A stretch of DNA of 64,000 nucleotides from IMG/VR virus record IMGVR_UViG_3300037725_000018, positions 159,358 through 223,357 of that record; one strand, given 5' to 3'. Position 1 is the stretch's first letter, and every line of letters begins with the position of its first letter. Position numbers and translations under genes: made by a program. Positions 40,001-56,779 of this stretch are shown here, piece by piece. Under the pieces are notes generated by a model. The model searched no databases and had not been told where the DNA came from. It saw nothing but the letters and a program-made list of their open reading frames with translations.

Positions 40001-40678
40001 CTAGTAATGTTTTAAGTATTCTTGATTTTGGACTTGGGTTTTGCTCCAAGCCGCGTATTCGGTTTGTCCGTTTCGGTTTTTGTATGCAGACAAGTTTTCG
40101 TTTCGGTTCTGCCTGTCTTGAACGTGAGACACGTGAATCCACCCGGACTCCCCAAACTCGTAAATGATTTGGTCATACGGAAGACCACTCTCTACAACAA
40201 TCCATTCGTAAACGGTAGACAAACTTTCATTTGAAACTTGAAAGTCGATTGCTTGGCCTGTGGTGTGTTGTGAATTGTCATGGGAACCAATAGCCCGGTT
40301 AAGTTTCAATGAGCGATACCCGCTTGTCACGATAACGGGTTTACCGAAGTGAGTTCGAACAGGCTCCATAACGTTTTGAAGAAGCTTTCGAAAGTTGTCC
40401 ACGTGCTTCTTTGGTGGGGTATTGTCAATCCCAAGACGCTTTGCGGTATTGGAGTGAATCATTTCTCGATACCGAAAGTGCCTTGTAAGATGGTCTTGGG
40501 GCTTTGGACGGACCCAACGCTTTTCTTGAGGCTCATATTCTACGTCTGTCGGGTCTTCTTCTTTTACGCCTACCTTAACCTCTGGAGGCTCCACAACGGA
40601 AGGCTCAAAGGAAGGTGACGGTTTATCTTGATTTTCAGATTTGAAAAACGAAGCTGCCTTTTTAAAAATGTTCTTCAT
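40001..40678 (-). CDS. Peptidase M15A (D-Ala-D-Ala peptidase-like), probable endolysin
   Basis: HFRYREM..S.TAKRLGIDN...VTSGYRS..LNRAIG...SQH..GQAIDF...WIHVS; start placed after TATATA motif. Confidence 0.88.
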   Translation of the reverse strand: MKNIFKKAASFFKSENQDKPSPSFEPSVVEPPEVKVGVKEEDPTDVEYEPQEKRWVRPKPQDHLTRHFRYREMIHSNTAKRLGIDNTPPKKHVDNFRKLLQNVMEPVRTHFGKPVIVTSGYRSLKLNRAIGSHDNSQHTTGQAIDFQVSNESLSTVYEWIVVESGLPYDQIIYEFGESGWIHVSHVQDRQNRNENLSAYKNRNGQTEYAAWSKTQVQNQEYLKHY

Positions 40679-40720
40679 ATTACACATCTTTTTGTGTATA
40701 TATAGGGCAAAAATAAAAAA

Positions 40721-40746
40721 GGGAAGACCTGTTTTCAAGTCTTCCC
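40721..40746 (-). terminator. Terminator-like hairpin downstream of tRNA
   Basis: GGGAAGAC..GTCTTCCC stem with A/T-run. Confidence 0.55.
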
Positions 40747-40770
40747 TTCGTTCTTAAAAAAGTAAGTGAG

Positions 40771-40843
40771 TACCCAAGGCAGGACTCGAACCTGCAACCT
40801 TCGGATTAGGAATCCGACGCTCTTCCGGTTGAGCTACATGGGT
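40771..40843 (-). tRNA. tRNA-Arg(CCU)
   Basis: ACCCATG/CTTGGGT acceptor stem (one mismatch), TAGCTCAA D-arm, TCGGA-TTCCTAA-TCCGA anticodon arm, GGTTCGAGTCC T-arm; no encoded CCA. Confidence 0.9.
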
Positions 40844-45326: not shown

Positions 45327-45499
45327 AGCCTGCGTGTTGAAATTTGAAATTCAATAATCATTCTAGTTTTTCCGAAAATTGCGTGTTCTTTTAAACAGAA
45401 GATGTTTGCTTTTGTTCCTTTTAGAATATAAATCTTGTCTCCGTCTCTCAAAAAGTCGTCTTCAATCAATCTTTGATCTGTTCTCTTTACAACAGTCAT
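45320..45499 (-). CDS. Small hypothetical protein coupled to thyA stop
   Basis: 59 aa from MTVVKRTD; ATGA overlap. Confidence 0.5.
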   Translation of the reverse strand: MTVVKRTDQRLIEDDFLRDGDKIYILKGTKANIFCLKEHAIFGKTRMIIEFQISTRRLC

Positions 45500-46410
45500 A
45501 CCGCAATCGGGGCCTTGATCCAACTTCCGCTTTCGTACCCTTTTAGATTAAAATCTTCAAACTCAAAGTCGTCAATCGACGTTTGACCTTCGGAAACTTC
45601 AAGAGAGGGGAGGGAATAGCTTTTTCGGTTCATCATTTCAACGGCAGGCTCGAAGTGATTTTTATACAAATGCGCGTCCCCAATTGTATAGACAAGTTCG
45701 CCGGGAACGTGTCCGGTAAGCCGCGAAACCATGATTGTAAGAAGAGAATAGGAGGAAATGTTAAATGGAAGGCCCAAAAACGTGTCGTTGGACCGAATGT
45801 AAATCTGGCAGTCCAGCGCCCTTTTTGGAACGTCGTATGTTTGAAGAACAGACTCGTTAACGGGTTTGCTGCACGGGCCACCTAAAACCTCTTCTTCAAG
45901 TGCCGTTACCCGCTCTTGAAAAGAAAGCGTTCGGCTGTAGAATTGAAACATGATGTGGCAAGGAAATAGGTTCATGTCTTCGAGCTTCCCTGCGTTCCAA
46001 GCGGAAACGACGTGTCTTCTACTGTCCGGGTTGGAGTTGATATTGTCAATAACGTTTTGAAGCTGGTCAATGCGGTTTCCGTCCTTGTCTTCCCACTTTC
46101 TCCATTGAACGCCGTACAACGGGCCAACATTTCCATCTTCGTCTGCCCACTCGTCCCAAATTCCAACTTCGTTTTCAACAAGGTACTTGATGGATTCTTC
46201 CCCCCGAAGAAACCATATAAGCTCGTGAACTAAGCTTCGAAACTTTGTTTCTTTAACTGTAACAATTGGAAAGTTGTCTGTTGAAACCGGGAACCTCATT
46301 TGGTGGCCGAAAACCGAACGGGTTCCTGTTCCTGTTCGGTCTTCTTTGTCTGTTCCCGTTTGGATAATTTTTTGAATTAGGTCTGTATACTGCTTATCAA
46401 CAATGTTCAT
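45496..46410 (-). CDS. thyA: Thymidylate synthase
   Basis: DRTGTGT, YGVQWR, RRHVVSAWN, FPCH, YIRSNDTFLGLPFNI (Asn, dUMP type), GDAHLY. Confidence 0.95.
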   Translation of the reverse strand: MNIVDKQYTDLIQKIIQTGTDKEDRTGTGTRSVFGHQMRFPVSTDNFPIVTVKETKFRSLVHELIWFLRGEESIKYLVENEVGIWDEWADEDGNVGPLYGVQWRKWEDKDGNRIDQLQNVIDNINSNPDSRRHVVSAWNAGKLEDMNLFPCHIMFQFYSRTLSFQERVTALEEEVLGGPCSKPVNESVLQTYDVPKRALDCQIYIRSNDTFLGLPFNISSYSLLTIMVSRLTGHVPGELVYTIGDAHLYKNHFEPAVEMMNRKSYSLPSLEVSEGQTSIDDFEFEDFNLKGYESGSWIKAPIAV

Positions 46411-48104: not shown

Positions 48105-48830
48105 TTAGTTTAAGGCTTTATGAATTTCTTTACGAATGAATGTTCGAAGCGATTCGTTTTTTTCGTCTTCGTCCGGGTCACTTGACGTGTATGTTGGTTC
48201 GTCGGAATCCCCGTCTTCGGAGCTTTGATCCGCGTCGTCGGATTTTACAGATTGACGTTTCTTTCTAACAAGCTCTTCTTTTTCTTCGTCAGAAAGTTTT
48301 TCTGCCTTTGATTTTGGAACGCATTTTGGGTACTCGTGTTCCGGATTGTCTTCTCTATCTTCGTCGTCGCTTGACGCTCCACACGGCGGGTGCTCTCCGT
48401 CAACGGTTCTTGAAATATCTACCCAATTTTCCTCATCGAACCAGTTATCCAAATCTTCATCTTCGTTTAACATTCGAGAAACAGACTTGAACGTGTCAAC
48501 GTCTTCTCGAATTTGATTTCGAATGAAAGTGCGAATAACGGACTCGGATTTTCTTTGGTCGCTTGGATCTGAACTTACCATGTCTGGATCTTGCTTGTTG
48601 TCGTTGTTTTTACGTCTTTTCCGGCGAACCAAACGCTCTTTTTCTTTTTTTGTCATTTGATCCGCTTTCTTTTTCGGAACGCATTTTGGATAACCTTTCT
48701 TTTCTGTGTTCTCTCCACATTCAGGGTGAGAACCGTCGTCGTTTGTCCGGGATATATCAACCCACGTTCCACCCCCTTTGCTAGAGTCAAACCACGTGTC
48801 AAGACCGTCTTTTTCGCCTAAGATTCCCAT
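48105..48830 (-). CDS. Protein with two tandem WF..W.DISR...HP.CG...YPKCVP domains (DUF5872-associated type)
   Basis: Domain repeated twice, each copy followed by an amphipathic (I/L)RTFIR helix. Confidence 0.75.
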   Translation of the reverse strand: MGILGEKDGLDTWFDSSKGGGTWVDISRTNDDGSHPECGENTEKKGYPKCVPKKKADQMTKKEKERLVRRKRRKNNDNKQDPDMVSSDPSDQRKSESVIRTFIRNQIREDVDTFKSVSRMLNEDEDLDNWFDEENWVDISRTVDGEHPPCGASSDDEDREDNPEHEYPKCVPKSKAEKLSDEEKEELVRKKRQSVKSDDADQSSEDGDSDEPTYTSSDPDEDEKNESLRTFIRKEIHKALN

Positions 48831-48835
48831 AACTG

Positions 48836-49624
48836 CTACTTGCCGATTTGCCTTTTGATTTCTTCACGGACCACCTTCCGAAGCATTTGTTCTTCAACGG
48901 TTTCCCACTCGCCCCCAAGTTCTTCGTACCTTTGAACAGCCCAACCATTAGCGTAAGCGGAATTTCCGGTAATTGTTACTGTTGACCCTTGACGCATAAC
49001 CCACGTTCCGTGTTCAGTCTGTGGGCACCAAACATCTTCTCTTCCGTCGTCTTCAATGTGCATGTTTTGTAAACCTCGGTGGCGGCGCTCTACGTCAAAA
49101 CTTGATAATTCTTCAAGGGCTTCTCCTTCAACACTTTCCGAAAGCTTCGCAGATGTTAAAAGGTTGTAGCTCGTTGGAAGCTCAGACGTTTCAATGAGCC
49201 TTCGGTCTTCAAACTTGTTTTTTCGAAAGGCAACCCACTTGTGCCCCGGAGTGCAGCGAACATCAAAACTTACCCTGTCTTTTGACATGCGCTTTATCGG
49301 AGCATCTTCGAATCTATGTTTATCTTCAACTTTGCTCCATGAAAGCACATTTTCATCTATATCATAAGCCAAAATTTCATCGCCAATTTCAATTCGGTCA
49401 TGGGCTTTCCAACCTTCGCGAGTCAAGGCTTGACTGTCAAGGGGGACGCAAGGGTAAACGTCAAATCCATCCCCGTCGTTTGGGGCCTCGACGGTTACTT
49501 CCTCCCCGTCCACAGTTCGGGACACGGAGTTTTTTTCGCCCTTGGTTACGGCAAGCACGTCTTGCCAGAGGTCTTCATCTTTTGGCCTGTTATCTGTATC
49601 TTCTGTTAAACGTCTTCTTTTCAT
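48836..49624 (-). CDS. DUF5872-like protein interrupted by a mini-intein
   Basis: Exteins join to FDVYP|SAYANGWAVQRYEELGGEW. Confidence 0.8.
   Translation of the reverse strand: MKRRRLTEDTDNRPKDEDLWQDVLAVTKGEKNSVSRTVDGEEVTVEAPNDGDGFDVYPCVPLDSQALTREGWKAHDRIEIGDEILAYDIDENVLSWSKVEDKHRFEDAPIKRMSKDRVSFDVRCTPGHKWVAFRKNKFEDRRLIETSELPTSYNLLTSAKLSESVEGEALEELSSFDVERRHRGLQNMHIEDDGREDVWCPQTEHGTWVMRQGSTVTITGNSAYANGWAVQRYEELGGEWETVEEQMLRKVVREEIKRQIGK
48962..49450 (-). mobile_element. Mini-intein (Hint domain, no homing endonuclease), 163 aa
   Basis: Starts CVPLDSQALTREGW; block B CTPGHKW; block F DVWCPQT.HGTWV; ends ITGN before Ser +1. Confidence 0.88.
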
Positions 49625-50267: not shown

Positions 50268-50603
50268 CTACTGCCGTGTGTAGTTTATAAATTCATCAAA
50301 TCTTTCGGCGTTAAACGCCTTGTCGTCAACAAATACGTCAAAAGCGGGTTTGCCCATTTTTAACTCGTCGTATTTACACCCCCACCTTTGAAGTTGGCGT
50401 TCTGTAAGGGGCCTCCAGTTTTTCCCGGTCTTTGTTCCTCTTGCGGTCCAATAAACAACGGTATGACCGTCTTCGTAGATTTGGTTGATCTTTTTGATGT
50501 TTTCCTCGATTGGAACCGCGCTTTCGTATGAATAGTCTTCAGGGCCTTCTGTTTGGCCTCTACCTTCACAAATTACGTTATCAATGTCTACATATACGTC
50601 CAT
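50268..50603 (-). CDS. HAD-family (capsule-biosynthesis-type) phosphatase
   Basis: VDIDNVIC, YWTARG, MGKPAFDVFVDDKA motifs. Confidence 0.85.
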   Translation of the reverse strand: MDVYVDIDNVICEGRGQTEGPEDYSYESAVPIEENIKKINQIYEDGHTVVYWTARGTKTGKNWRPLTERQLQRWGCKYDELKMGKPAFDVFVDDKAFNAERFDEFINYTRQ

Positions 50604-50605
50604 AT

Positions 50606-51256
50606 CTAAAATCCGTTTAAACGCTTTCTCATGCTTTCTACAGAACCATCATGTCCGAACATCGTTTTTAGCTTCTGCACATACATACGAATATGTTCGT
50701 CCGTTTGTTCCGAGCACCACCAATCGATGTGCTGGTTTAAATCCAGTGTACGCAACCTTTCGATAAGCTTTTTTGCCCCGGACGGGCGAATCACGTAAGC
50801 CACGAAACCTACGTTTGGCTTCTTTGAATAACTTGATGGACTAGAGTACGCAGGCTTTATTTTCTTAGGGTCGTCTTCAAGCAAATCGTGGTTTGGATTC
50901 GGTCTTCGGGCAAACAGGTTGTAAAAATCCCCGTCTGGAAGCCGGGTTAAAATGCTTTCAATCTTGTCTTCAAGCCCTTTAACAAGCGGAACCGCATCGT
51001 CTTCTAAGACCAAAACTGGTACTTCCATACTTTGAACATGCATCCAAAGAGAAAGGTGGGCAATCGCCGCCCCTGCTCTACCTTTCTTTGAATCTTCATA
51101 ATTGGGATTTTTGACTTTCGACAGCGCCGTTTGCACCCGAACGTCTTCGGGGTTTTCAACCACGTCTACGGGTTCCCACTGCAAAAGATCAAACGGAAAC
51201 TTTTTTTGTTGAAGCCTGAAATCTTTATCACTCGCAATACAAAATGTTTTGAACAT
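50606..51256 (-). CDS. Glycosyltransferase family 25-like
   Basis: GAAIAHLSLW...VLVLEDDA...AYVIRPSGAKKLI...HIDW. Confidence 0.82.
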   Translation of the reverse strand: MFKTFCIASDKDFRLQQKKFPFDLLQWEPVDVVENPEDVRVQTALSKVKNPNYEDSKKGRAGAAIAHLSLWMHVQSMEVPVLVLEDDAVPLVKGLEDKIESILTRLPDGDFYNLFARRPNPNHDLLEDDPKKIKPAYSSPSSYSKKPNVGFVAYVIRPSGAKKLIERLRTLDLNQHIDWWCSEQTDEHIRMYVQKLKTMFGHDGSVESMRKRLNGF

Positions 51257-51259
51257 TCT

Positions 51260-51496
51260 TTAATACTGGTTTTTATGATGCTCGTTGACGGTGGGGTCTT
51301 CAAAACCAAGAGATTTCAAAGCTTTCTTCATTCGATCCGGGTCATTCAAGTCTTCGGTTCGAATCTAATCGGCATAGCCGAGCTTTTCAACACGCTCGTA
51401 ATACATGTCCCAATACCTACTAATCGCTTCAAGTTTTGAAAGATCCGTTGAAAAGTTCGGAAAGCATCGGGTGTGAAGTGATAACCGATTAGTCAT
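51260..51496 (-). pseudogene. Gene remnant with in-frame TAG, possibly a sulfotransferase-like C-terminal fragment
   Basis: MTNRL..CFPNF..EAISRYWDMYYERVEKLGYAD*IRTEDLND..LKSLGF; TAG at 51365-51367. Confidence 0.5.
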
Positions 51497-52276
51497 TTAT
51501 TGAAACATGTCCAATGGAATATTAAAGTAGTTGTCCACAACTTGACCGTCTCCGGGAGAGGGCTTCCAATTTTTGATGTTTCGGACCTTTCCAACAAGAT
51601 TCGAGCGGTCTAGTCTTCTTCTTGACGTGTTTTTATACTTCCAGAGAAGGTTTTCTCGAACGTTCTTCATGTGATGCATATGAACATCTTCAGGATGAAA
51701 AAGATGTCCTACGTTGTCTTCGGTATTTTTAATTTTTCTAGTAGGGTCCACCTTACAAAAGAAATCGTTTGCTATTTTGGTATTTTGATTAATTTCGCAA
51801 ATGAATGGAACATGAAAACGCCCACCTTCAGAGTACCCTTCCTTTTGATAAATGGGAAGATTCCAGTAGTTTTTGATTTTACAGGCGGTAAGAGGCAGCG
51901 TCCGGTTTTTTACTTGCCTCTTTGCCCATTCAAACTCGCGGGTCCTGTAAAATTCGTCTACATCCATAGACACAAAATGCGTACAGCCGTTTTCTAGGCA
52001 GTCTTCAATTCCGGCCATTCGTTTCTTTTTTTCATGACCCTTGGCTATGTCCACAGTTCCGGTGTCTTTTGGGTTCATCTTAATCAACTTATCAACAAAC
52101 CCCTCTTTTCTTAGAGTTTTCAACCGTTTTTTATCTACTTCTCGGATGCCTTGCCCATAGTAAGATTCGGTTTGATATACAACGTTAATATAATCTACGT
52201 GGTTTTGGACAGAAAGAATCGAATACTTTAAAAGCTCAATTCCATCAAATGCAGAATAAGAAAGTGCAAGTTTCAT
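51497..52276 (-). CDS. GT-A fold glycosyltransferase
   Basis: SILSVQNHVDYINVVY; HFVSMDVDEFY DxD motif. Confidence 0.75.
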   Translation of the reverse strand: MKLALSYSAFDGIELLKYSILSVQNHVDYINVVYQTESYYGQGIREVDKKRLKTLRKEGFVDKLIKMNPKDTGTVDIAKGHEKKKRMAGIEDCLENGCTHFVSMDVDEFYRTREFEWAKRQVKNRTLPLTACKIKNYWNLPIYQKEGYSEGGRFHVPFICEINQNTKIANDFFCKVDPTRKIKNTEDNVGHLFHPEDVHMHHMKNVRENLLWKYKNTSRRRLDRSNLVGKVRNIKNWKPSPGDGQVVDNYFNIPLDMFQ

Positions 52277-52277
52277 G

Positions 52278-52901
52278 TCACAAGTGGTTTATCGTTCCTT
52301 CATCAATCCAATGCTGAATAACTTTTGCTTCGTTTTCTAGGTCATGAATCCGGTCCAATGTATTTTCGGAGGCGCTATCGTCGTAGTAGTGAACACCCGT
52401 GTCTCCAGTTTCGGTCAAGCTATCAAATCCGGTGACGTACACGTTTTGATATCTGTCGTCCATTATGCAGTGAGACACAATGATAAGACCAGATGAAAAA
52501 TCTTTTCGTTTATGCATCCCCAGATTGTTTTTTCGGTTGCACCGATAAACGTGTTTTTTTACTCTATTGTAATTGATCGTTTCAAACTGATCTCCCATTT
52601 TTCTTTTAAGCATGTGAAGACCCCTACGAAGACTGGATTTGTGAGTCCACGTCATTAAAAAGTAAACACTTCCAAACTTCTCTTTAAAGTAGTTTTGGTC
52701 GAACTTCTTTTTCATGTCTCGAAGGGTATATATATTCGTGTTAAAAGATATCGAATCTACCTTCGAGCCAACACGGTCTTCATTTTCAAAAATTCCTTTT
52801 TCAAACCCCTTAAATCGAATGACGTGATTGAAGCTGTCAATCACGTCTCCATTTTTATCATCTAATAAGGTGTCTCCGGATGCGGCAATCAAAGTCTTCA
52901 T
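52278..52901 (-). CDS. GT29-like sialyltransferase (divergent)
   Basis: Sialylmotif L-like IDSFNHVIRF...VGSK; S-like SSGL...VYVTGFD; HYY; HDLENE. Confidence 0.72.
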   Translation of the reverse strand: MKTLIAASGDTLLDDKNGDVIDSFNHVIRFKGFEKGIFENEDRVGSKVDSISFNTNIYTLRDMKKKFDQNYFKEKFGSVYFLMTWTHKSSLRRGLHMLKRKMGDQFETINYNRVKKHVYRCNRKNNLGMHKRKDFSSGLIIVSHCIMDDRYQNVYVTGFDSLTETGDTGVHYYDDSASENTLDRIHDLENEAKVIQHWIDEGTINHL

Positions 52902-52929
52902 AATCGTTTCGTCTTTGGTTTGTGCTTAA

Positions 52930-53433
52930 TCAAACCTCCTCAATTATATCTTTCCAAGCAACCTTTCCAAAAACTCTAGCAAGCCTGTACGCGGTCCACC
53001 GAAGATATTCTGAATCTTTCGGGTCTGAAACCAATACAAGGTCTGCCTGTTTTTGAGTCAAACGCCCACCCTTAATTTGCTTCCAGCTAGTTGTTTCTGC
53101 AAATCCAACAGACGGGTTCACAGAGGGTTCTTTAACTTGATAGGTAACTTCCCCTTTGTTTTTATAAATCCAGTCGTGAGCCACCACAGAACCTTCTAAA
53201 GCGTAATAGTCAAAAAGAAGTACCTTCAAAGGTTGAACGGGCCTTGGGATGCTCATTTCATATTCATAACCTTCCGGAACCGTAAGTTTTGCCTTCTGCC
53301 CATTTAAGAGGGGAAAAACGTGTGTATAGTCTTCACATAAGGTTCGTTTTTTCTTTCCGTTTGACGGGTGGCTTTTCGGGCTGTCAACTTGCCCACATTC
53401 CCAATCTGAAATCAATCTTTCTTCGATTCTCAT
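52930..53433 (-). CDS. DUF1353-like protein
   Basis: TVPEGY...SIPR...AHDWIY...QKQADL...Y...RVFG pattern. Confidence 0.7.
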   Translation of the reverse strand: MRIEERLISDWECGQVDSPKSHPSNGKKKRTLCEDYTHVFPLLNGQKAKLTVPEGYEYEMSIPRPVQPLKVLLFDYYALEGSVVAHDWIYKNKGEVTYQVKEPSVNPSVGFAETTSWKQIKGGRLTQKQADLVLVSDPKDSEYLRWTAYRLARVFGKVAWKDIIEEV

Positions 53434-53801
53434 ACTTCTTTTTTGCTAATTCGATCTTGTATAATGATTTCTCCTTCAACCGGAAAACGAGAGTTTTCTT
53501 CGGAAGGAACGTCTACTCTAAGGTCGTAAACCGATTTTCCCGGTGATATAACTTGTACGTCTTCCGGAGCAAGGTTGAACTTGACTTCTGAAGAATCTTC
53601 ATCTAAAGAAAGTCTGCCGTTTTCTATGCTACATTCAAGGAGGCTAGTTTCATCGGATCTTCTTCTTTTTATCCGGACAAAAAAGTTCCACTCGGACACG
53701 TCTTTTGGGGTTCCGTCGCTTTTAAGAAAACGGTCAATTTCTAAGTAAAGACCGTTTCCTTCGCTTACGTGATAGTTTTTCTCTTTAGGCTGTGAGTTCA
53801 T
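53430..53801 (-). CDS. BppU-N/Ig-like phage structural domain protein
   Basis: DGTPKDVSEW.F...IK...V.F.L.PED......VYDL...VEG.III pattern. Confidence 0.6.
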   Translation of the reverse strand: MNSQPKEKNYHVSEGNGLYLEIDRFLKSDGTPKDVSEWNFFVRIKRRRSDETSLLECSIENGRLSLDEDSSEVKFNLAPEDVQVISPGKSVYDLRVDVPSEENSRFPVEGEIIIQDRISKKEV

Positions 53802-54727
53802 TTTCTAAGATCCTTTCTCTTTTCTTTTTCTTCATCTAGGAGCGTTCTTGGCGAGTTCCCGGACAGACTTTTTTCTGTATTCACAAGAATTTCAATAAGC
53901 CGATACATTTCATCCGGCTCCAAAGAAGCAAACTGGTCGCTCCCCCACATATCTCTGTCTAAGGTCACGTGGCGTTCCATCCACTTCGATCCCAAGGCAA
54001 CGGCTACTGCTGCGGTTTCAAGTTCGGTTTCATGCCCGGAGTACCCAAGCTCTTTACCGTGACCCGTTCCGTACATCTGTTGAAGTGTTCTCTTTAGGTG
54101 TCGGATGTATTGAAGTTGAAGATTTTCTGCTTTTGTCGGGTAGCTTGAAACCGAATGCATAACAACGTCCGGGTCGCAGTTCCAGATGCTTTCTTGAATT
54201 TCCCGCTCAGTTGACATTCCCGTTGAGACAATGAGAAAGTCAAACTTTTCTCTTGCGTATTCGGTAAGCTTTTTGTTTGTAAGATGTGCAGATGGAATTT
54301 TGCCTATGTCCGTGTATTGGGCCATAAAGTCAACACTTTCGGTGTCCCATACGCTAGAGAAAATGGAAACATCCAAGTCCCGGACATACCGAAAAAGTTC
54401 TTCAAACTCTTCCTTGCCAAACTCGATATACTCTTTGTACTTAATGTACGGGATAGGGTCCTCTTCAAATGGGGTTTGGCGAAGCTGGCTTTTTTTCCAT
54501 TCGGGGACGCAAACTTCCGGTGTTCTTTTTTGAAACTTCACAAAATCAAACCCACACGTTTCAGACACATCAATTAACTTTTTCGCGGTGTCTACGTCTC
54601 CGTTGTGGTTGATTCCGATTTCGCCAACCGAAGTTACGTTTTTCGGCGTAACTTGACGTTTATCTGTTGATTTTAAAAAAGAGTCGGTTTGGTTTTTTAC
54701 GTCGTCATATGTGTAAAGTGTGTTCAC
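53798..54727 (-). CDS. neuB: N-acetylneuraminate/nonulosonate synthase (short form, no SAF domain)
   Basis: GEIGINHNGD, VKFQKR, KIPSA, IVSTGMS, MHSVSSYP, GYSGHE, ERHVTLDR.MWGSDQ.ASLEP. Confidence 0.93.
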   Translation of the reverse strand: MNTLYTYDDVKNQTDSFLKSTDKRQVTPKNVTSVGEIGINHNGDVDTAKKLIDVSETCGFDFVKFQKRTPEVCVPEWKKSQLRQTPFEEDPIPYIKYKEYIEFGKEEFEELFRYVRDLDVSIFSSVWDTESVDFMAQYTDIGKIPSAHLTNKKLTEYAREKFDFLIVSTGMSTEREIQESIWNCDPDVVMHSVSSYPTKAENLQLQYIRHLKRTLQQMYGTGHGKELGYSGHETELETAAVAVALGSKWMERHVTLDRDMWGSDQFASLEPDEMYRLIEILVNTEKSLSGNSPRTLLDEEKEKRKDLRK

Positions 54728-54777
54728 GTTACTTTTAATAATATCTTGGTAGTTTGTTCTTCAAAACCTGTGTAACA

Positions 54778-55434
54778 CTAGTATTTGATTTGAATTTTAT
54801 CTTGTTGTTGCATTCGTTTCATAAGTTTCTTCTCTGCGCTGTAGTCGTGTGGCCCGGAAATGTCTTGATCCAACTCTTCAAAATAATGTCTTTTTTCCAC
54901 GTCTGACTTCATGTGAAAACCAAAACCATAAAGATCAATCTCTACGTCACTTCCAGAACACTCGCTTAACAGAATCGTCATTAAAAGTCCAAGACTCGCT
55001 TGCCCGTGAGTGTTATACTTTCGAAGCTTACGTTTTGACAGAGAATAAATTCTATTGTTTAAAAACAAAAGCTCGTTTGCCACATCTTCATAAAATTCAA
55101 CTGCCCGTTTTCTGCGTTTTGATCCAGAGGGTTTGAATATAAGACGTTCTCCGTCCGTGATTCGGGCCATATCCTCTTTAGTTGTTTCAGAGGCGTTAAT
55201 TCCGTGTCCTAAATGCATTACGGAGTTTAAACACCGAAACGTCGTCTTCGACCCAACGTGCTTTTCGTACCCCTCTACCTCTGCACCGTTGAACCTTAAA
55301 ACCCAATCATGGTCGTCAATTTCGCTTCCAAGTGTGTTTTCTAACACAACGCCGGAGTTCCCAACAATCGCCACAGATGAAGGGATCGTGTAGTTGAACT
55401 TAGATTGAAAATACGTTGAAATTCCTTTTGGCAT
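54778..55434 (-). CDS. GT29 sialyltransferase
   Basis: Sialylmotif L AIVGNSG..IDDHDWVLRFN....Y..HVGSKTTFR; S-motif; HYF; HDYSAE. Confidence 0.88.
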   Translation of the reverse strand: MPKGISTYFQSKFNYTIPSSVAIVGNSGVVLENTLGSEIDDHDWVLRFNGAEVEGYEKHVGSKTTFRCLNSVMHLGHGINASETTKEDMARITDGERLIFKPSGSKRRKRAVEFYEDVANELLFLNNRIYSLSKRKLRKYNTHGQASLGLLMTILLSECSGSDVEIDLYGFGFHMKSDVEKRHYFEELDQDISGPHDYSAEKKLMKRMQQQDKIQIKY

Positions 55435-55440
55435 TTTGAT

Positions 55441-56082
55441 TTATTTCACAATATCAAATTGATTAGACTCGCAAAACCTGTTCACAACTTCTTCTTCTTT
55501 ATCCCACGTATGAGAACCGTCGTGGTGGTCGCTCCATTGTTCCCAATAATGGCGGTTTTCAACTTTTTCTTGGTGAAACCCAAATCCGTAAAGCGTAACA
55601 TGCTCGCAAAGGCAAGAAAACGTAAGACAAGCAAACATTCCGGTTGAAGGGTGTCTATTTAACTTGTGTTTTACATCTTTTGAAATATATTCTTTAAATT
55701 CTTCAGTAAGCTCGTAAATCGTATTTGAACTATGCGTTAAATTTCGAGCAACGTTTAAAGACCTTTCGTTAACGGGGACGAATATCAAATTTTGATTTCT
55801 AAGCGTTTTAAGCCAGTTTGAAGGCGTAGACGTGTAGTTAAGCGTTTTTCCCTGCTGAAGAAGCCCGTTGACAAGCCGAAACGTCGTTTTTGATCCAACG
55901 TCTTCTTTATGTCCTTTCACTTCTGCGGCGTTCATCCGAACAACACATTCATGGCTGTCAATTTCTTCTCCATTTCCAGAACCGGAAAGGATTCCGCTAT
56001 TTCCCACCACCGCACAATCAGTGAAGCTAACTGTTTTATCTTTGAATATGCGTTGGTGGGGTTTGGGTTGCCGCTTAATCAT
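55441..56082 (-). CDS. GT29 sialyltransferase
   Basis: CAVVGNSGIL..IDSHECVVRMN...DVGSKTTFR; PSTGMF..C..VTLYGF; HYW; HTWDKE. Confidence 0.92.
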   Translation of the reverse strand: MIKRQPKPHQRIFKDKTVSFTDCAVVGNSGILSGSGNGEEIDSHECVVRMNAAEVKGHKEDVGSKTTFRLVNGLLQQGKTLNYTSTPSNWLKTLRNQNLIFVPVNERSLNVARNLTHSSNTIYELTEEFKEYISKDVKHKLNRHPSTGMFACLTFSCLCEHVTLYGFGFHQEKVENRHYWEQWSDHHDGSHTWDKEEEVVNRFCESNQFDIVK

Positions 56083-56779
56083 TCACTTTTTCTTGATATT
56101 GCCTCCAATCTTCTTTTGTGTCTACGTCAATAACTCTGTTGTTTAGTCGGTAATATATAGTATCTTTGTTATAGAGGTTTTTATTTAGAGAATCAAGTTC
56201 GTCCACCCGAAATACAGATACAAAATGGCTGTACTCGTAGACGTTTTCTCCGGAATGGATTTCAAAGTCAAGGTCTTTGAGCTTCCCCTTTGCCTCTTGC
56301 CTACGAAACTTCCCCCTTTCAGATGGAAAAACGTGACGCGCCTTCATCGTATCTGAATCAAGACGCATCATAAGATGTGAATACGTGTCTTCGGTCGGGG
56401 GCTGCAGGCAAAGAAGGGAAGAAGCTTGGTTCTTTTTGTAAAAGCCAAGGATACTTCGAACGTCTCGCTTGTATTCACGCTCCGGGTAGGTAGGGTACAA
56501 AAGAACAATGTCGTCGTTGTCGTAGAAATCAAACTTTGAAAAGACGTGTTCGATTACAGGCTTTATACTTGTTTCATCCTGTGCAAGTTCTTTGGGGCGT
56601 TCGACAAGCTTCATCCGGCTTTCACGAACGAACTCTTGAATTTTCGGGTCGTCTGTTGTCACAATGATTCGGCTTAAAACTCTACGTGGAAATTTTTCTT
56701 TGATGATCGGGACAAGCTTCCGATTTTTATTCGGAAAACCTTTTGATCCCTCTCTTGCAGGTACAATATAGTGGAACAT
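56075..56779 (-). CDS. neuA: CMP-N-acetylneuraminate (acylneuraminate) cytidylyltransferase
   Basis: IVPAREGSKGFPNKN, VTTDD, RPKELAQD, LYPTYP.R, IDVDT..DW. Confidence 0.9.
   Translation of the reverse strand: MFHYIVPAREGSKGFPNKNRKLVPIIKEKFPRRVLSRIIVTTDDPKIQEFVRESRMKLVERPKELAQDETSIKPVIEHVFSKFDFYDNDDIVLLYPTYPEREYKRDVRSILGFYKKNQASSLLCLQPPTEDTYSHLMMRLDSDTMKARHVFPSERGKFRRQEAKGKLKDLDFEIHSGENVYEYSHFVSVFRVDELDSLNKNLYNKDTIYYRLNNRVIDVDTKEDWRQYQEKVND

What the first reader, a model, noticed from the sequence alone, without database searches (positions are those of the whole stretch)
52278..56082. Three GT29 (eukaryote-type sialylmotif) transferases in one phage
Seen: two genes carry near-canonical sialylmotifs L, S, III and VS, and a third is divergent. 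Established: bacteria mostly use GT38/42/52/80/97/100 for sialylation, while GT29 is mainly eukaryotic with sporadic bacterial and viral members. Inference: paralogues with different linkages or acceptors, possibly building oligo/poly-nonulosonate chains, and potentially salt-tolerant biocatalysts.
Basis: partly seen in the sequence, partly recalled or inferred. Interest (0 to 1): 0.65.

Follow-up and report, generated by a model that had tools for sequence, protein, structure and literature searches.

The report
Three sialyltransferase-type enzymes in phage
A 223-kb tailed phage from tidal-flat sediment carries a compact gene cassette that should make an activated sialic-acid-like sugar and attach it with three anciently diverged, small, soluble enzymes of the "animal-type" GT29 family, which I did not find described in phages.

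Summary
Three minus-strand genes (55441-56082, 54778-55434, 52278-52901) score above Pfam's GT29 cut-off. They match only GT29 sialyltransferases in the PDB. All keep motif III and the catalytic His/Glu of motif VS. The third is a real but divergent GT29: both Asn residues of motif L are replaced.

The genome is a complete 223-kb myovirus with portal, tail sheath and SbcC-like genes. The three genes lie in a tightly packed cassette with a SAF-less NeuB-type synthase, a CMP-ulosonate synthetase-like gene, a minimal HAD phosphatase, a GT25 and a probable GT-A protein. The genome has no NeuC, aminotransferase or dehydratase genes and no priming transferase.

Each paralogue has orthologues in related phage contigs, so the duplications are old. 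Relatives carry up to six GT29 genes, together with sulfotransferases and GT10.

Among 50,697 GenBank phage records only one (484 kb, uncultured) holds full-length homologues. PHROGs has no family for the two copies scanned (A, C). Metagenomes hold many short homologues in phage-like contexts.

Best reading: a phage-encoded supply of a CMP-nonulosonate plus three transferases of different specificity that cap a pre-existing glycan. The sugar (Kdn is my guess) and the acceptor (host envelope or virion) are unresolved. The salt-tolerance idea is unsupported.

The parts
56075..56779 (-). CMP-ulosonate (CMP-NulO) synthetase-like cytidylyltransferase, 234 aa. It is the first gene of the cassette and overlaps GT29-A by 8 nt.
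   Evidence: Pfam CTP_transf_3 32.2 bits against a cut-off of 22.6. Best PDB matches are CMP-Neu5Ac synthetases 6IFD (E 3e-9) and 1EYR. NCBIfam PseF scores 48 bits, far below its equivalog cut-off. Orthologues stand beside GT29 genes in L012, L014, L016, L018, L021 and L029. dN/dS against L029 is 0.066.
55441..56082 (-). GT29-A, 213 aa: a minimal soluble GT29 with all four sialylmotifs and both motif L/S cysteines.
   Evidence: PF00777 131.7 bits. Pig ST3Gal-I 2WML matches at E 4e-18, with HYWE and the VS His/Glu aligned. The AF2 model has pLDDT 77.7 and pTM 0.81; Foldseek ranks ST8SiaIII, ST3Gal-I, ST6GalNAc2 and ST6Gal1 at about E 1e-10, ahead of GT42 CstII at 2e-4. No TM segment. dN/dS 0.031. 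Clade with L012, L016 and P0001 orthologues, support 99/91.
54778..55434 (-). GT29-B, 218 aa: canonical motifs L, S, III (HYFE) and VS, but without the L/S cysteine pair.
   Evidence: PF00777 102.3 bits. The PDB matches are only GT29 enzymes, best 2WNB at E 2.6e-11. 30% identical to A. Orthologue in L016/P0013 at 48% and in L029 at 80%; clade support 99/94.
53798..54727 (-). NeuB-family nonulosonate (or NulO-9-phosphate) synthase, 309 aa, lacking the C-terminal SAF/antifreeze-like domain.
   Evidence: PF03102 181.7 bits with no SAF hit. NCBIfam NeuB_NnaB scores 171 bits against an equivalog cut-off of 399.65, and PseI 134 against 340. Best PDB matches are 6NCS, 1VLI and PseI 8H2C. Orthologues at 52-58% identity stand beside GT29 genes in L012, L015, L016 and L017. 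Thousands of SAF-less relatives of 270-285 aa occur in marine metagenomes.
53430..53801 (-). Conserved 123-aa phage protein of unknown role (beta-sandwich lead); its start overlaps the NeuB stop by 4 nt.
   Evidence: phrog_1084 E 1.9e-10, function unknown. The nearest Atlas clusters are all viral; an LtfC-like fold is a lead only, TM 0.72. Orthologues sit directly after NeuB in L012 and L016.
52930..53433 (-). 167-aa accessory ORF (DUF1353 / 'tail assembly chaperone'-like); not part of the conserved core.
   Evidence: phrog_1158 E 1.9e-9. Pfam DUF1353 is weak, 17 bits, below its cut-off. No orthologue in L012 or L016. Strain-variant hot spot.
52278..52901 (-). GT29-C, 207 aa: a divergent GT29 that starts directly at motif L. 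Both motif-L Asn residues are replaced, and the catalytic His/Glu are kept.
   Evidence: PF00777 29.8 bits against a cut-off of 23. hhalign against the A subfamily gives 99.7%, E 6e-27. A profile of its subfamily hits only GT29 in the PDB, ST8SiaIII at E 7e-12. The AF2 model has pLDDT 88 and pTM 0.87, and its top folds are all GT29. Lys at the R-x-N position occurs in 5 of 167 aligned GT29 domains, which are exactly this clade. Orthologue in L012 at 39% identity in the same cassette position; clade support 100/100.
51497..52276 (-). 259-aa probable GT-A-type glycosyltransferase (inferred); 1 nt downstream of GT29-C.
   Evidence: No Pfam, NCBIfam or PHROG hit. It has a D-V-D motif in a beta/alpha context (read). 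The Atlas feature search gives viral clusters, one of them 32% Glycos_transf_2. An orthologue follows GT29-C in L012 at 42% identity.
50606..51256 (-). GT25-family glycosyltransferase, 216 aa (LOS beta-galactosyltransferase type).
   Evidence: PF01755 28.7 bits against a cut-off of 24. phrog_854 'glucosyltransferase' E 7e-7. GT25 genes accompany the GT29 arrays in L014, L018 and L021.
50268..50603 (-). Minimal HAD-superfamily phosphatase, 111 aa; inferred to be the NulO-9-phosphate phosphatase.
   Evidence: All four HAD motifs are readable (DIDNV, T53, K85, DD92-93). NCBIfam TIGR01689 'capsule biosynthesis phosphatase' E 6e-5, below its cut-off. phrog_1238 E 3e-25. Orthologues lie in the L012 cassette and directly after the GT29 arrays of L015 and L017. 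A bacterial GT29 locus has NeuB, CTP_transf_3 and a HAD (Hydrolase_3) in a row.

Best explanation
The region is a phage-borne, operon-like cassette for capping glycans with a nonulosonic acid (NulO). Shown: it encodes a NeuB-type synthase, a minimal HAD phosphatase, a CMP-ulosonate synthetase-like enzyme, three GT29-fold transferases, a GT25 and one probable further GT-A enzyme. Inferred pathway: NeuB condenses PEP with a host hexose or hexosamine (phosphate). The HAD removes the 9-phosphate. The cytidylyltransferase makes the CMP-sugar. The three soluble cytoplasmic GT29 enzymes then transfer the sugar, with inversion and with the motif-VS histidine as base, to three different acceptor positions or linkages on a glycan that the phage does not initiate itself. 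The phage lacks NeuC, aminotransferase and dehydratase genes but keeps a phosphatase. The simplest donor is therefore Kdn made from mannose-6-phosphate; Neu5Ac made from host ManNAc(-6-P) is the alternative. GT29-C has a remodelled donor pocket and may use a different CMP-ulosonate, for example host CMP-Kdo. My preferred acceptor is a host envelope glycoconjugate (LPS/LOS or capsule intermediate) remodelled during infection, for example to block superinfection or stop progeny sticking to debris. Glycosylation of the virion is the main alternative.
For: All three are GT29 by HMM, profile and fold. The catalytic His/Glu and motif III are kept in all three. NeuB, CTP_transf_3 and HAD are identified. 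Intergenic gaps run from -8 to +50 nt, apart from one of 240 nt, and all genes lie on one strand. The module recurs. Of the 15 GT29 contexts fetched, 14 have a CTP_transf_3 gene and/or a NeuB- or KdsA-type synthase within 10 kb: L012, L014-L018, L020, L021, L023, L024 and L026-L029. L025 has none. Constraint is strong: dN/dS is 0.03-0.10 for the CMP-synthetase, GT29-A and NeuB. The three paralogues sit in three separately supported clades, each with orthologues in other phages. The genome has no Epimerase_2, DegT, SDR epimerase, Bac_transf, Glycos_transf_4, GT2 or GT4 Pfam hits. No TM segment is present. The idea that glycosyltransferases of marine myophages remodel the host O-chain comes from PMC7029224.
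Against: No biochemical data exist for any phage or bacterial GT29. The donor sugar is not determined: NeuB and the cytidylyltransferase fall far below every NCBIfam equivalog cut-off. The HAD's role rests on gene neighbourhood alone, and its PHROG carries a different annotation. Kdn is a parsimony argument, not a test. The acceptor is unknown: two phage-typical small proteins (phrog_1084; phrog_1158 'tail assembly chaperone') sit inside the cassette and point rather towards the virion. GT29-C lacks two near-invariant donor-side Asn residues and could be inactive or a binding protein. No RNA run holds the stretch, so expression is not shown. The host is unknown.
Confidence: 0.6

Rival explanations
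1. Virion glycosylation. The cassette decorates the phage's own structural proteins (tail fibres, baseplate or capsid) with an acidic NulO-capped glycan in the cytoplasm before assembly, as virus-encoded enzymes do in giant viruses and some mycobacteriophages.
For: All the enzymes are soluble and the genome has no lipid-carrier priming enzyme. A conserved phage-specific beta-sandwich-like 123-aa protein and a 'tail assembly chaperone'-like ORF lie inside the cassette. A probable tail-fibre module lies 11 kb away. In marine myophages glycosyltransferases cluster with tail-fibre genes (PMC7029224). Relatives add sulfotransferases, GT10 and methyltransferases, which resembles the glycan toolkits of giant viruses.
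Against: No acceptor protein is identified. The annotations of the two small ORFs are weak, and the 167-aa ORF is absent from the related cassettes. In the relatives the cassette's immediate neighbours are DNA-metabolism genes, not structural genes.
Confidence: 0.3
2. At least GT29-C, and perhaps others, is not a nonulosonate transferase. It would transfer another CMP-activated ulosonic acid such as Kdo, supplied by the host.
For: The GT29-C clade alone replaces the Asn of R-x-N by Lys and loses the Asn of GNSG. A short GT29 from the same half of the tree sits beside a KdsA-type DAHP_synth_1 and a CTP_transf_3 in L023. From my own knowledge, plant GT29-like proteins have been proposed as Kdo/Dha transferases.
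Against: The orthologue of GT29-C in L012 also lies in a NeuB cassette with no KdsA. Another member of that half of the tree is linked to a full Leg/Pse-type pathway. The deep branches of the tree are weak, 63/0.
Confidence: 0.2
3. GT29-C is a decayed paralogue: catalytically dead, or kept as a glycan- or CMP-binding subunit.
For: Lowest Pfam score (29.8 bits). Two donor-side Asn residues are lost and YGFG has become TGFD.
Against: The reading frame is intact. The catalytic His and Glu and motif III are kept. The orthologue at 39% identity keeps the same substitutions and the same cassette position, and three relatives at 76-90% identity are known. The fold model is confident, pLDDT 88.
Confidence: 0.1
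4. The sugar is put on phage DNA (a hypermodified base) rather than on a glycan.
For: In this window and in relatives the cassette is embedded among DNA-metabolism genes: ThyA, MazG, a PD-(D/E)XK nuclease, a DprA/YAcAr-like protein, clamp loader and a DNA methylase.
Against: No hydroxymethylase was found; the ThyA homologue is canonical (phrog_160, 349 bits). GT29, GT25, GT10 and carbohydrate sulfotransferases are glycan enzymes. To my knowledge no GT29-type enzyme acts on DNA.
Confidence: 0.03
5. Artefact: bacterial or eukaryotic DNA mis-assembled into, or mis-binned with, a phage contig.
For: GT29 is a mainly eukaryotic family, and the record is a metagenome assembly.
Against: It is a single contig with phage hallmark genes. 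GC in the cassette is 0.40-0.41, like its surroundings. The same synteny (PD-(D/E)XK, YAcAr-like, CTP_transf_3, GT29, NeuB) appears in independent phage contigs, including a 484-kb GenBank phage and a 468-kb NCBI assembly. Identical overlapping contigs tile the stretch in runs not marked as sources, with no joints.
Confidence: 0.01

Closest known systems
Animal Golgi sialyltransferases of CAZy GT29 (pig ST3Gal-I 2WML/2WNB, human ST8SiaIII 5BO6-9, ST6GalNAc2, ST6Gal1)
   Same: Same Pfam family, same GT-A variant 2 fold, and the same sialylmotifs L, S, III and VS, including the catalytic histidine. GT29-A even keeps the motif L/S cysteine pair.
   Different: The phage enzymes are about 210 aa against 300-400 aa. 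They have no signal anchor or stem and shorter loops between motifs L and S. B and C lack the disulfide cysteines. They are predicted to be cytoplasmic and lie in an operon with the genes that make the donor. The donor sugar and linkage are unknown.
Bacterial GT29-like proteins of marine proteobacteria (Petit et al. 2018, PMC5811610)
   Same: They lack a TM segment, mostly lack the L/S disulfide, retain the sialylmotifs and are marine. One bacterial locus found here (L020) likewise links NeuB, CTP_transf_3, a HAD and a GT29.
   Different: Here the genes are in tailed-phage genomes, in arrays of two to six paralogues. The bacterial example is 471 aa and falls outside the three phage clades. I could not fetch Petit's 23 sequences, so the direct relationship was not tested.
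Bacterial GT42 sialyltransferases (Campylobacter Cst-I / Cst-II)
   Same: Soluble or peripheral enzymes of GT-A variant 2 fold that cap LOS with sialic acid and are encoded beside neuB and neuA. This is the closest functional analogue of the proposed mechanism.
   Different: The fold match is much weaker than to GT29 (E 2e-4 against 1e-10 for A). No GT42 family signal and no GT29-type sialylmotifs are shared.
Glycosyltransferase islands of marine T4-like myophages (pelagimyophages and cyanomyophages; PMC7029224)
   Same: Large marine myoviruses with clusters of sugar-synthesis and transferase genes, thought to remodel the host O-chain.
   Different: That paper reports GT8 as the most represented glycosyltransferase family and deoxy-sugar enzymes. 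It does not mention GT29, NeuB or a CMP-NulO module.
Poxvirus GT29 (myxoma virus alpha-2,3-sialyltransferase; from my own knowledge, not checked here)
   Same: A virus-encoded GT29.
   Different: It is a eukaryotic virus carrying a host-derived, membrane-anchored Golgi-type enzyme. It has no donor-synthesis genes and no paralogue array.

Membership tests
CAZy GT29 / Pfam PF00777 | Score above the curated Pfam gathering threshold | tested here: met
   131.7, 102.3 and 29.8 bits against a cut-off of 23. The whole genome has three matches and 14 control genomes have none.
CAZy GT29 / Pfam PF00777 | Sialylmotif L (donor side: G-N-S-G ... R-x-N) | tested here: inconclusive
   A and B are canonical. 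In C both Asn residues are replaced (A/G-S-G; R-F-K). The Lys state occurs in 5 of 167 aligned domains, all in the C clade.
CAZy GT29 / Pfam PF00777 | Sialylmotif S (S-x-G ... Y/F-G-F-G) | tested here: met
   A has PSTG...YGFGF and B has ASLG...YGFGF. C has SSG...TGFD, a partial match.
CAZy GT29 / Pfam PF00777 | Motif III (H-Y-x-E/D) and motif VS with the catalytic His (H-x4-E) | tested here: met
   HYWE, HYFE and HYYD, with His and Glu of VS present in all three. The role of the VS histidine as catalytic base is taken from PMC10225777.
CAZy GT29 / Pfam PF00777 | GT-A variant 2 fold nearest to solved GT29 structures | tested here: met
   For the A and C models, GT29 chains fill the top ranks (E 1e-10 and 4e-8), ahead of GT42. 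B was not modelled, but it hits only GT29 by sequence.
Eukaryotic Golgi GT29 (the classical membership) | Type II membrane anchor plus stem, and the essential motif L-S disulfide | tested here: not met
   No hydrophobic segment: the maximum 19-residue Kyte-Doolittle mean is 1.3 or less. The cysteine pair is present only in A. Bacterial GT29 proteins are the same in this respect (PMC5811610).
CAZy GT29 / Pfam PF00777 | Transfer of a sialic acid from a CMP donor with inversion | not testable with these tools
   Indirect only: linkage to NeuB or KdsA and to CTP_transf_3 genes in 14 of 15 loci.
N-acetylneuraminate synthase (NeuB_NnaB equivalog, TIGR03569) | Score above the equivalog cut-off; C-terminal SAF domain | tested here: not met
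   171 bits against a cut-off of 399.65; PseI 134 against 340; no SAF domain. It belongs to the NeuB Pfam family (181.7 bits) but its substrate is unassigned.
CMP-NulO synthetase (NeuA / PseF type) | CTP_transf_3 fold; equivalog score | tested here: inconclusive
   The Pfam criterion is met (32.2 bits against 22.6). PseF at 48 bits is far below its cut-off of 205.7. The best PDB matches are CMP-Neu5Ac synthetases.
CAZy GT42 (Cst-I/II type) | Closest fold and sequence match | tested here: not met
   GT42 chains rank after every GT29 chain and give no sequence hit.

The most novel reading that the evidence does not exclude
A lineage of large uncultured phages carries a 'Golgi-like' glycan workshop: arrays of GT29 with NeuB and a CMP-synthetase, plus GT25, GT10 fucosyltransferases and carbohydrate sulfotransferases in relatives. 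With it the phages would coat their own virions, or rebuild the host surface, with sialylated and, in relatives, fucosylated and sulfated glycans. Such phages would also be a large, overlooked reservoir and possible vector of the GT29 family, which bears on where eukaryotic sialylation came from.
Probability: 0.25. Interest if true: 0.8.

Novelty: new variant of a known kind. Interest (0 to 1): 0.62.

Why it matters
GT29 is the family that carries out all animal sialylation, and it has been treated as eukaryotic with a few bacterial outliers. Here it appears as a minimal (about 210 aa), soluble and mostly disulfide-free enzyme. It is multiplied into old paralogue families inside tailed-phage genomes and sits next to the genes that make its donor.

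If the enzymes are active, three things follow:
- They are easy-to-express starting points for sialo- or Kdn-glycan synthesis, unlike the Golgi enzymes, which are hard to produce.
- Phages would be able to write acidic nine-carbon sugars onto bacterial surfaces or onto themselves. That would affect receptor masking, superinfection and particle behaviour in sediments.
- The hypothesis of an alphaproteobacterial origin of eukaryotic GT29 would need to take a large viral pool into account.

The finding also flags a very abundant SAF-less NeuB clade in marine metagenomes whose product is unknown.

Tried and rejected
- Near-identical DNA search of the 19-kb end of the window against 50,697 GenBank phages found nothing.
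- tblastn of GT29-A, GT29-C and a marine short GT29 (P0176) against the same collection gave one uncultured 484-kb phage, nothing, and that same phage plus a 23%-coverage fragment in a Stenotrophomonas phage.
- The PHROGs scan found no family for GT29-A or GT29-C.
- The pattern scan of 185,579 prokaryote genomes with the A-clade profile found no relative. Only one peptide pattern was used, so this says little.
- The IMG/VR pattern scan gave only two loci, again limited by the patterns used.
- Metagenome scans for close GT29-C relatives gave nothing, and then only 23-26% identical loci. As a result no dN/dS could be computed for GT29-C.
- The word-based protein search badly under-reported the family (18 hits). 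The exhaustive profile search found 9,516 cluster representatives, of which 65 have E at or below 1e-30.
- Literature searches for GT29, PF00777 or sialyltransferase together with phage found no paper describing phage GT29. The library is limited to open-access papers.
- The promoter and terminator scan was no better than shuffled sequence.
- The 'salt-tolerant' idea is rejected: pI is neutral and there is no acidic excess.
- Recent tandem duplication of the three genes is rejected by the trees. The planned AU test did not finish in time and was dropped, because several strongly supported branches already separate the three.
- DNA modification and mis-assembly were considered and given low weight (see rivals).
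Only genetic code 11 was used. Read laying was given 5,901 letters.

Full report
WHAT IS THERE. Between 52278 and 56082, all on the minus strand, lie six ORFs. Three of them are GT29-A (55441-56082, 213 aa), GT29-B (54778-55434, 218 aa) and GT29-C (52278-52901, 207 aa). Pfam's Glyco_transf_29 model scores them 131.7, 102.3 and 29.8 bits against a curated cut-off of 23. Run over the whole genome, the model finds just these three places, and it finds nothing in 14 control genomes. By sequence, A, B and a profile of the C subfamily match only GT29 sialyltransferases in the PDB (one marginal non-GT29 hit for C at E 0.006). For A the best is pig ST3Gal-I at E 4e-18, with HYWE and the motif-VS His/Glu aligned.

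AlphaFold models of A (pLDDT 77.7, pTM 0.81) and C (pLDDT 88, pTM 0.87) match ST8SiaIII, ST3Gal-I, ST6GalNAc2 and ST6Gal1 first. The GT42 enzymes Cst-I and Cst-II come well behind.

THE MOTIFS. A and B have canonical motifs L (VGNSG ... R-x-N), S (S-x-G ... YGFGF), III and VS. C keeps S-S-G, HYYD and H-x4-E. These include the histidine that the literature identifies as the catalytic base (PMC10225777). C has lost the Asn of GNSG and carries Lys instead of the Asn of R-x-N. Among 167 aligned GT29 domains that Lys occurs five times, and those five are exactly the C clade. C is homologous beyond doubt: hhalign gives 99.7%, E 6e-27. None of the three has a membrane anchor. Only A keeps the cysteine pair that forms the essential disulfide of the animal enzymes. 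Petit et al. describe the same for bacterial GT29 (PMC5811610).

THE GENOME. The window is the last 64 kb of a 223,357-bp IMG/VR virus record that CheckV rates as complete. It encodes a T4-type portal, a tail sheath and an SbcC/gp46-like nuclease. The closest portals are those of an uncultured 484-kb phage (LR756508), Microcystis phage Mel-JY01, Flavobacterium phage 'immuto' and Rhodothermus phage RM378. The DNA occurs in several tidal-flat metagenomes. Two runs not marked as possible sources tile the stretch with identical overlapping contigs, show no joints, and also hold strain variants. It is a real phage population.

THE CASSETTE. The three genes are part of a ten-gene, tightly packed block (50268-56779). 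Gaps run from -8 to +50 nt, with one of 240 nt. In order of transcription the block reads:
- a CMP-ulosonate synthetase-like gene
- GT29-A
- GT29-B
- a NeuB-family synthase without the SAF domain
- a conserved 123-aa phage protein
- a 167-aa accessory ORF
- GT29-C
- a 259-aa probable GT-A protein
- a GT25
- a 111-aa HAD phosphatase
.

The rest of the genome has no NeuC-type epimerase, no DegT aminotransferase and no SDR dehydratase or epimerase. It also has no priming phosphoglycosyltransferase and no GT2 or GT4. The phage therefore brings the last three steps of donor synthesis and the capping enzymes. It must take both the hexose precursor and the acceptor from elsewhere.

RELATIVES. The module is conserved. 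IMG/VR contig L012 has, in the same order, PD-(D/E)XK, a YAcAr-like gene, the cytidylyltransferase, an A orthologue, NeuB, the 123-aa protein, a C orthologue (39% identity), the 259-aa protein and the HAD. L016 and L029 have A, B and NeuB. More distant relatives are expanded:
- Six GT29 genes with NeuB and three sulfotransferases on a 32-kb contig.
- Five GT29 genes in the 484-kb GenBank phage.
- GT29 with GT4, GT25, Sulfotransfer_2 and GT10 on a 179-kb contig, a 468-kb NCBI assembly and others.
- SAF-less NeuB relatives are very abundant in marine metagenomes. In the three contexts I opened they sit in phage-like contigs of about 12-142 kb next to CTP_transf_3 and/or a short GT29.
- One bacterial context links NeuB, the cytidylyltransferase, a HAD and a longer GT29.
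- One viral-looking contig pairs a short GT29 with a KdsA-type synthase, and another pairs one with a full Leg/Pse-type pathway.

In 14 of the 15 contexts a CMP-ulosonate pathway gene lies within 10 kb of the GT29. This is the main indirect evidence for the donor class.

PARALOGY AND CONSTRAINT. In a 167-row tree and in a careful 66-row tree (LG+C20+F+G4), A, B and C fall into three separately supported clades. Each clade contains orthologues from other phage contigs: A 99/91, B 99/94 then 98/99, C 100/100. The duplications therefore predate the divergence of these phages, which fits a division of labour. Against the closest relative (L029), dS is saturated and dN/dS is 0.03 for GT29-A, 0.07 for the cytidylyltransferase and 0.10 for NeuB. 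For B, dN is 0.15 with dS not computable.

HOW RARE IS IT? Rare among described phages, not rare in nature. One of 50,697 GenBank phage records has full-length homologues. PHROGs has no family for the two copies I scanned, A and C. My literature searches found no report. The exhaustive profile search, however, found 9,516 cluster representatives at E up to 1e-3 and 65 at E up to 1e-30. Many of these are 190-260 aa long and come from marine metagenomes, one of them from a Tara <0.22-um fraction.

MECHANISM, AND HOW SURE. Shown: the family, fold and motif state of the three enzymes; the composition of the cassette; its conservation; and the purifying selection on it. Inferred: NeuB makes a nine-carbon ulosonate (or its 9-phosphate) from PEP and a host sugar, the HAD dephosphorylates it, the cytidylyltransferase activates it, and the three GT29 enzymes add it at different positions.

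Kdn from mannose-6-phosphate is my preferred sugar, because it is the only NulO that needs no further enzyme and would give the phosphatase a role. I put this at about 0.4. For the acceptor I put a host envelope glycan at about 0.45 and virion proteins at about 0.3. The two phage-type small ORFs inside the cassette keep the virion model alive. GT29-C's altered donor pocket may mean a different CMP-ulosonate. The salt-tolerance idea has no support.

VERDICT. This is a genuine, well-supported finding. The enzymes are new members of a known family, in a setting that I did not find described: tailed phages, paralogue arrays and a self-contained donor supply. The biology of the product remains open.

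Noticed in passing
window 48836-49624 (-): The 262-aa ORF reads like a mini-intein (starts CVPLD..., has a T-P-G-H block, ends ...TITGN|S) inserted in a small protein with a YP|SAYANGWAVQRY junction. Pfam found nothing at E<0.01.
   Followed up: no
window 48105-48830 (-): A 241-aa, very acidic protein made of two internal repeats of about 110 aa, each with NWVDISRT...HPxCG...YPKCVPKxKA...EKExLVRxKR. No family hit.
   Followed up: no
window 53191-53425 (inside the 167-aa ORF 52930-53433): Hot spot of strain variants in tidal-flat runs: 74 differences on one 961-bp contig, while the neighbouring GT29 and NeuB contigs are identical. The ORF hits phrog_1158 'tail assembly chaperone' and is missing from the related cassettes.
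   Followed up: partly
window 52821-52847: Perfect inverted repeat with an 11-bp stem and a 5-nt loop inside the 5' part of the GT29-C coding sequence. Its meaning is unknown.
   Followed up: no
window 18626-39043 (-): A run of giant ORFs (1956, 1066, 1460, 618, 443 and 678 aa), ending with a 236-aa protein that carries a Peptidase_S74 (endosialidase/tail-fibre chaperone) domain. This is probably the tail-fibre / host-recognition module. The 1460-aa protein has an HNH-like stretch near its C-terminus.
   Followed up: partly
L014, L015, L018, L021 (related phage contigs): The GT29 arrays of relatives are flanked by Sulfotransfer_2 (carbohydrate sulfotransferase type), GT10 fucosyltransferase, GT25, GT4 and methyltransferase genes. 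This set of families resembles the Golgi toolkit for sulfated, sialylated and fucosylated glycans.
   Followed up: partly
L023:7929-12992: A short GT29 lies beside a KdsA-type DAHP_synth_1, a CTP_transf_3, a sulfotransferase and PhyH on a 96-kb virus-like contig. This hints that some short GT29 enzymes use CMP-Kdo.
   Followed up: no
marine metagenome proteins P0197-P0313; loci L026-L028: A very abundant clade of SAF-less NeuB proteins of 270-285 aa, 50-57% identical to the phage NeuB. In the three contexts opened they lie in phage-like contigs, next to a short GT29 (and in L027 and L028 also a CTP_transf_3). Their product is unknown.
   Followed up: partly
L006:5313-7238 (genome 45313-47238, -): A 641-aa protein that combines a ParB-like N-terminal part with cytidylyltransferase-like PHROG hits, far from the cassette.
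   Followed up: no
window 40001-40843 and 45496-46410: A Peptidase_M15 endolysin-like gene, a tRNA-Arg(CCT) and a canonical thymidylate synthase lie between the tail-fibre module and the glycan cassette.
   Followed up: no
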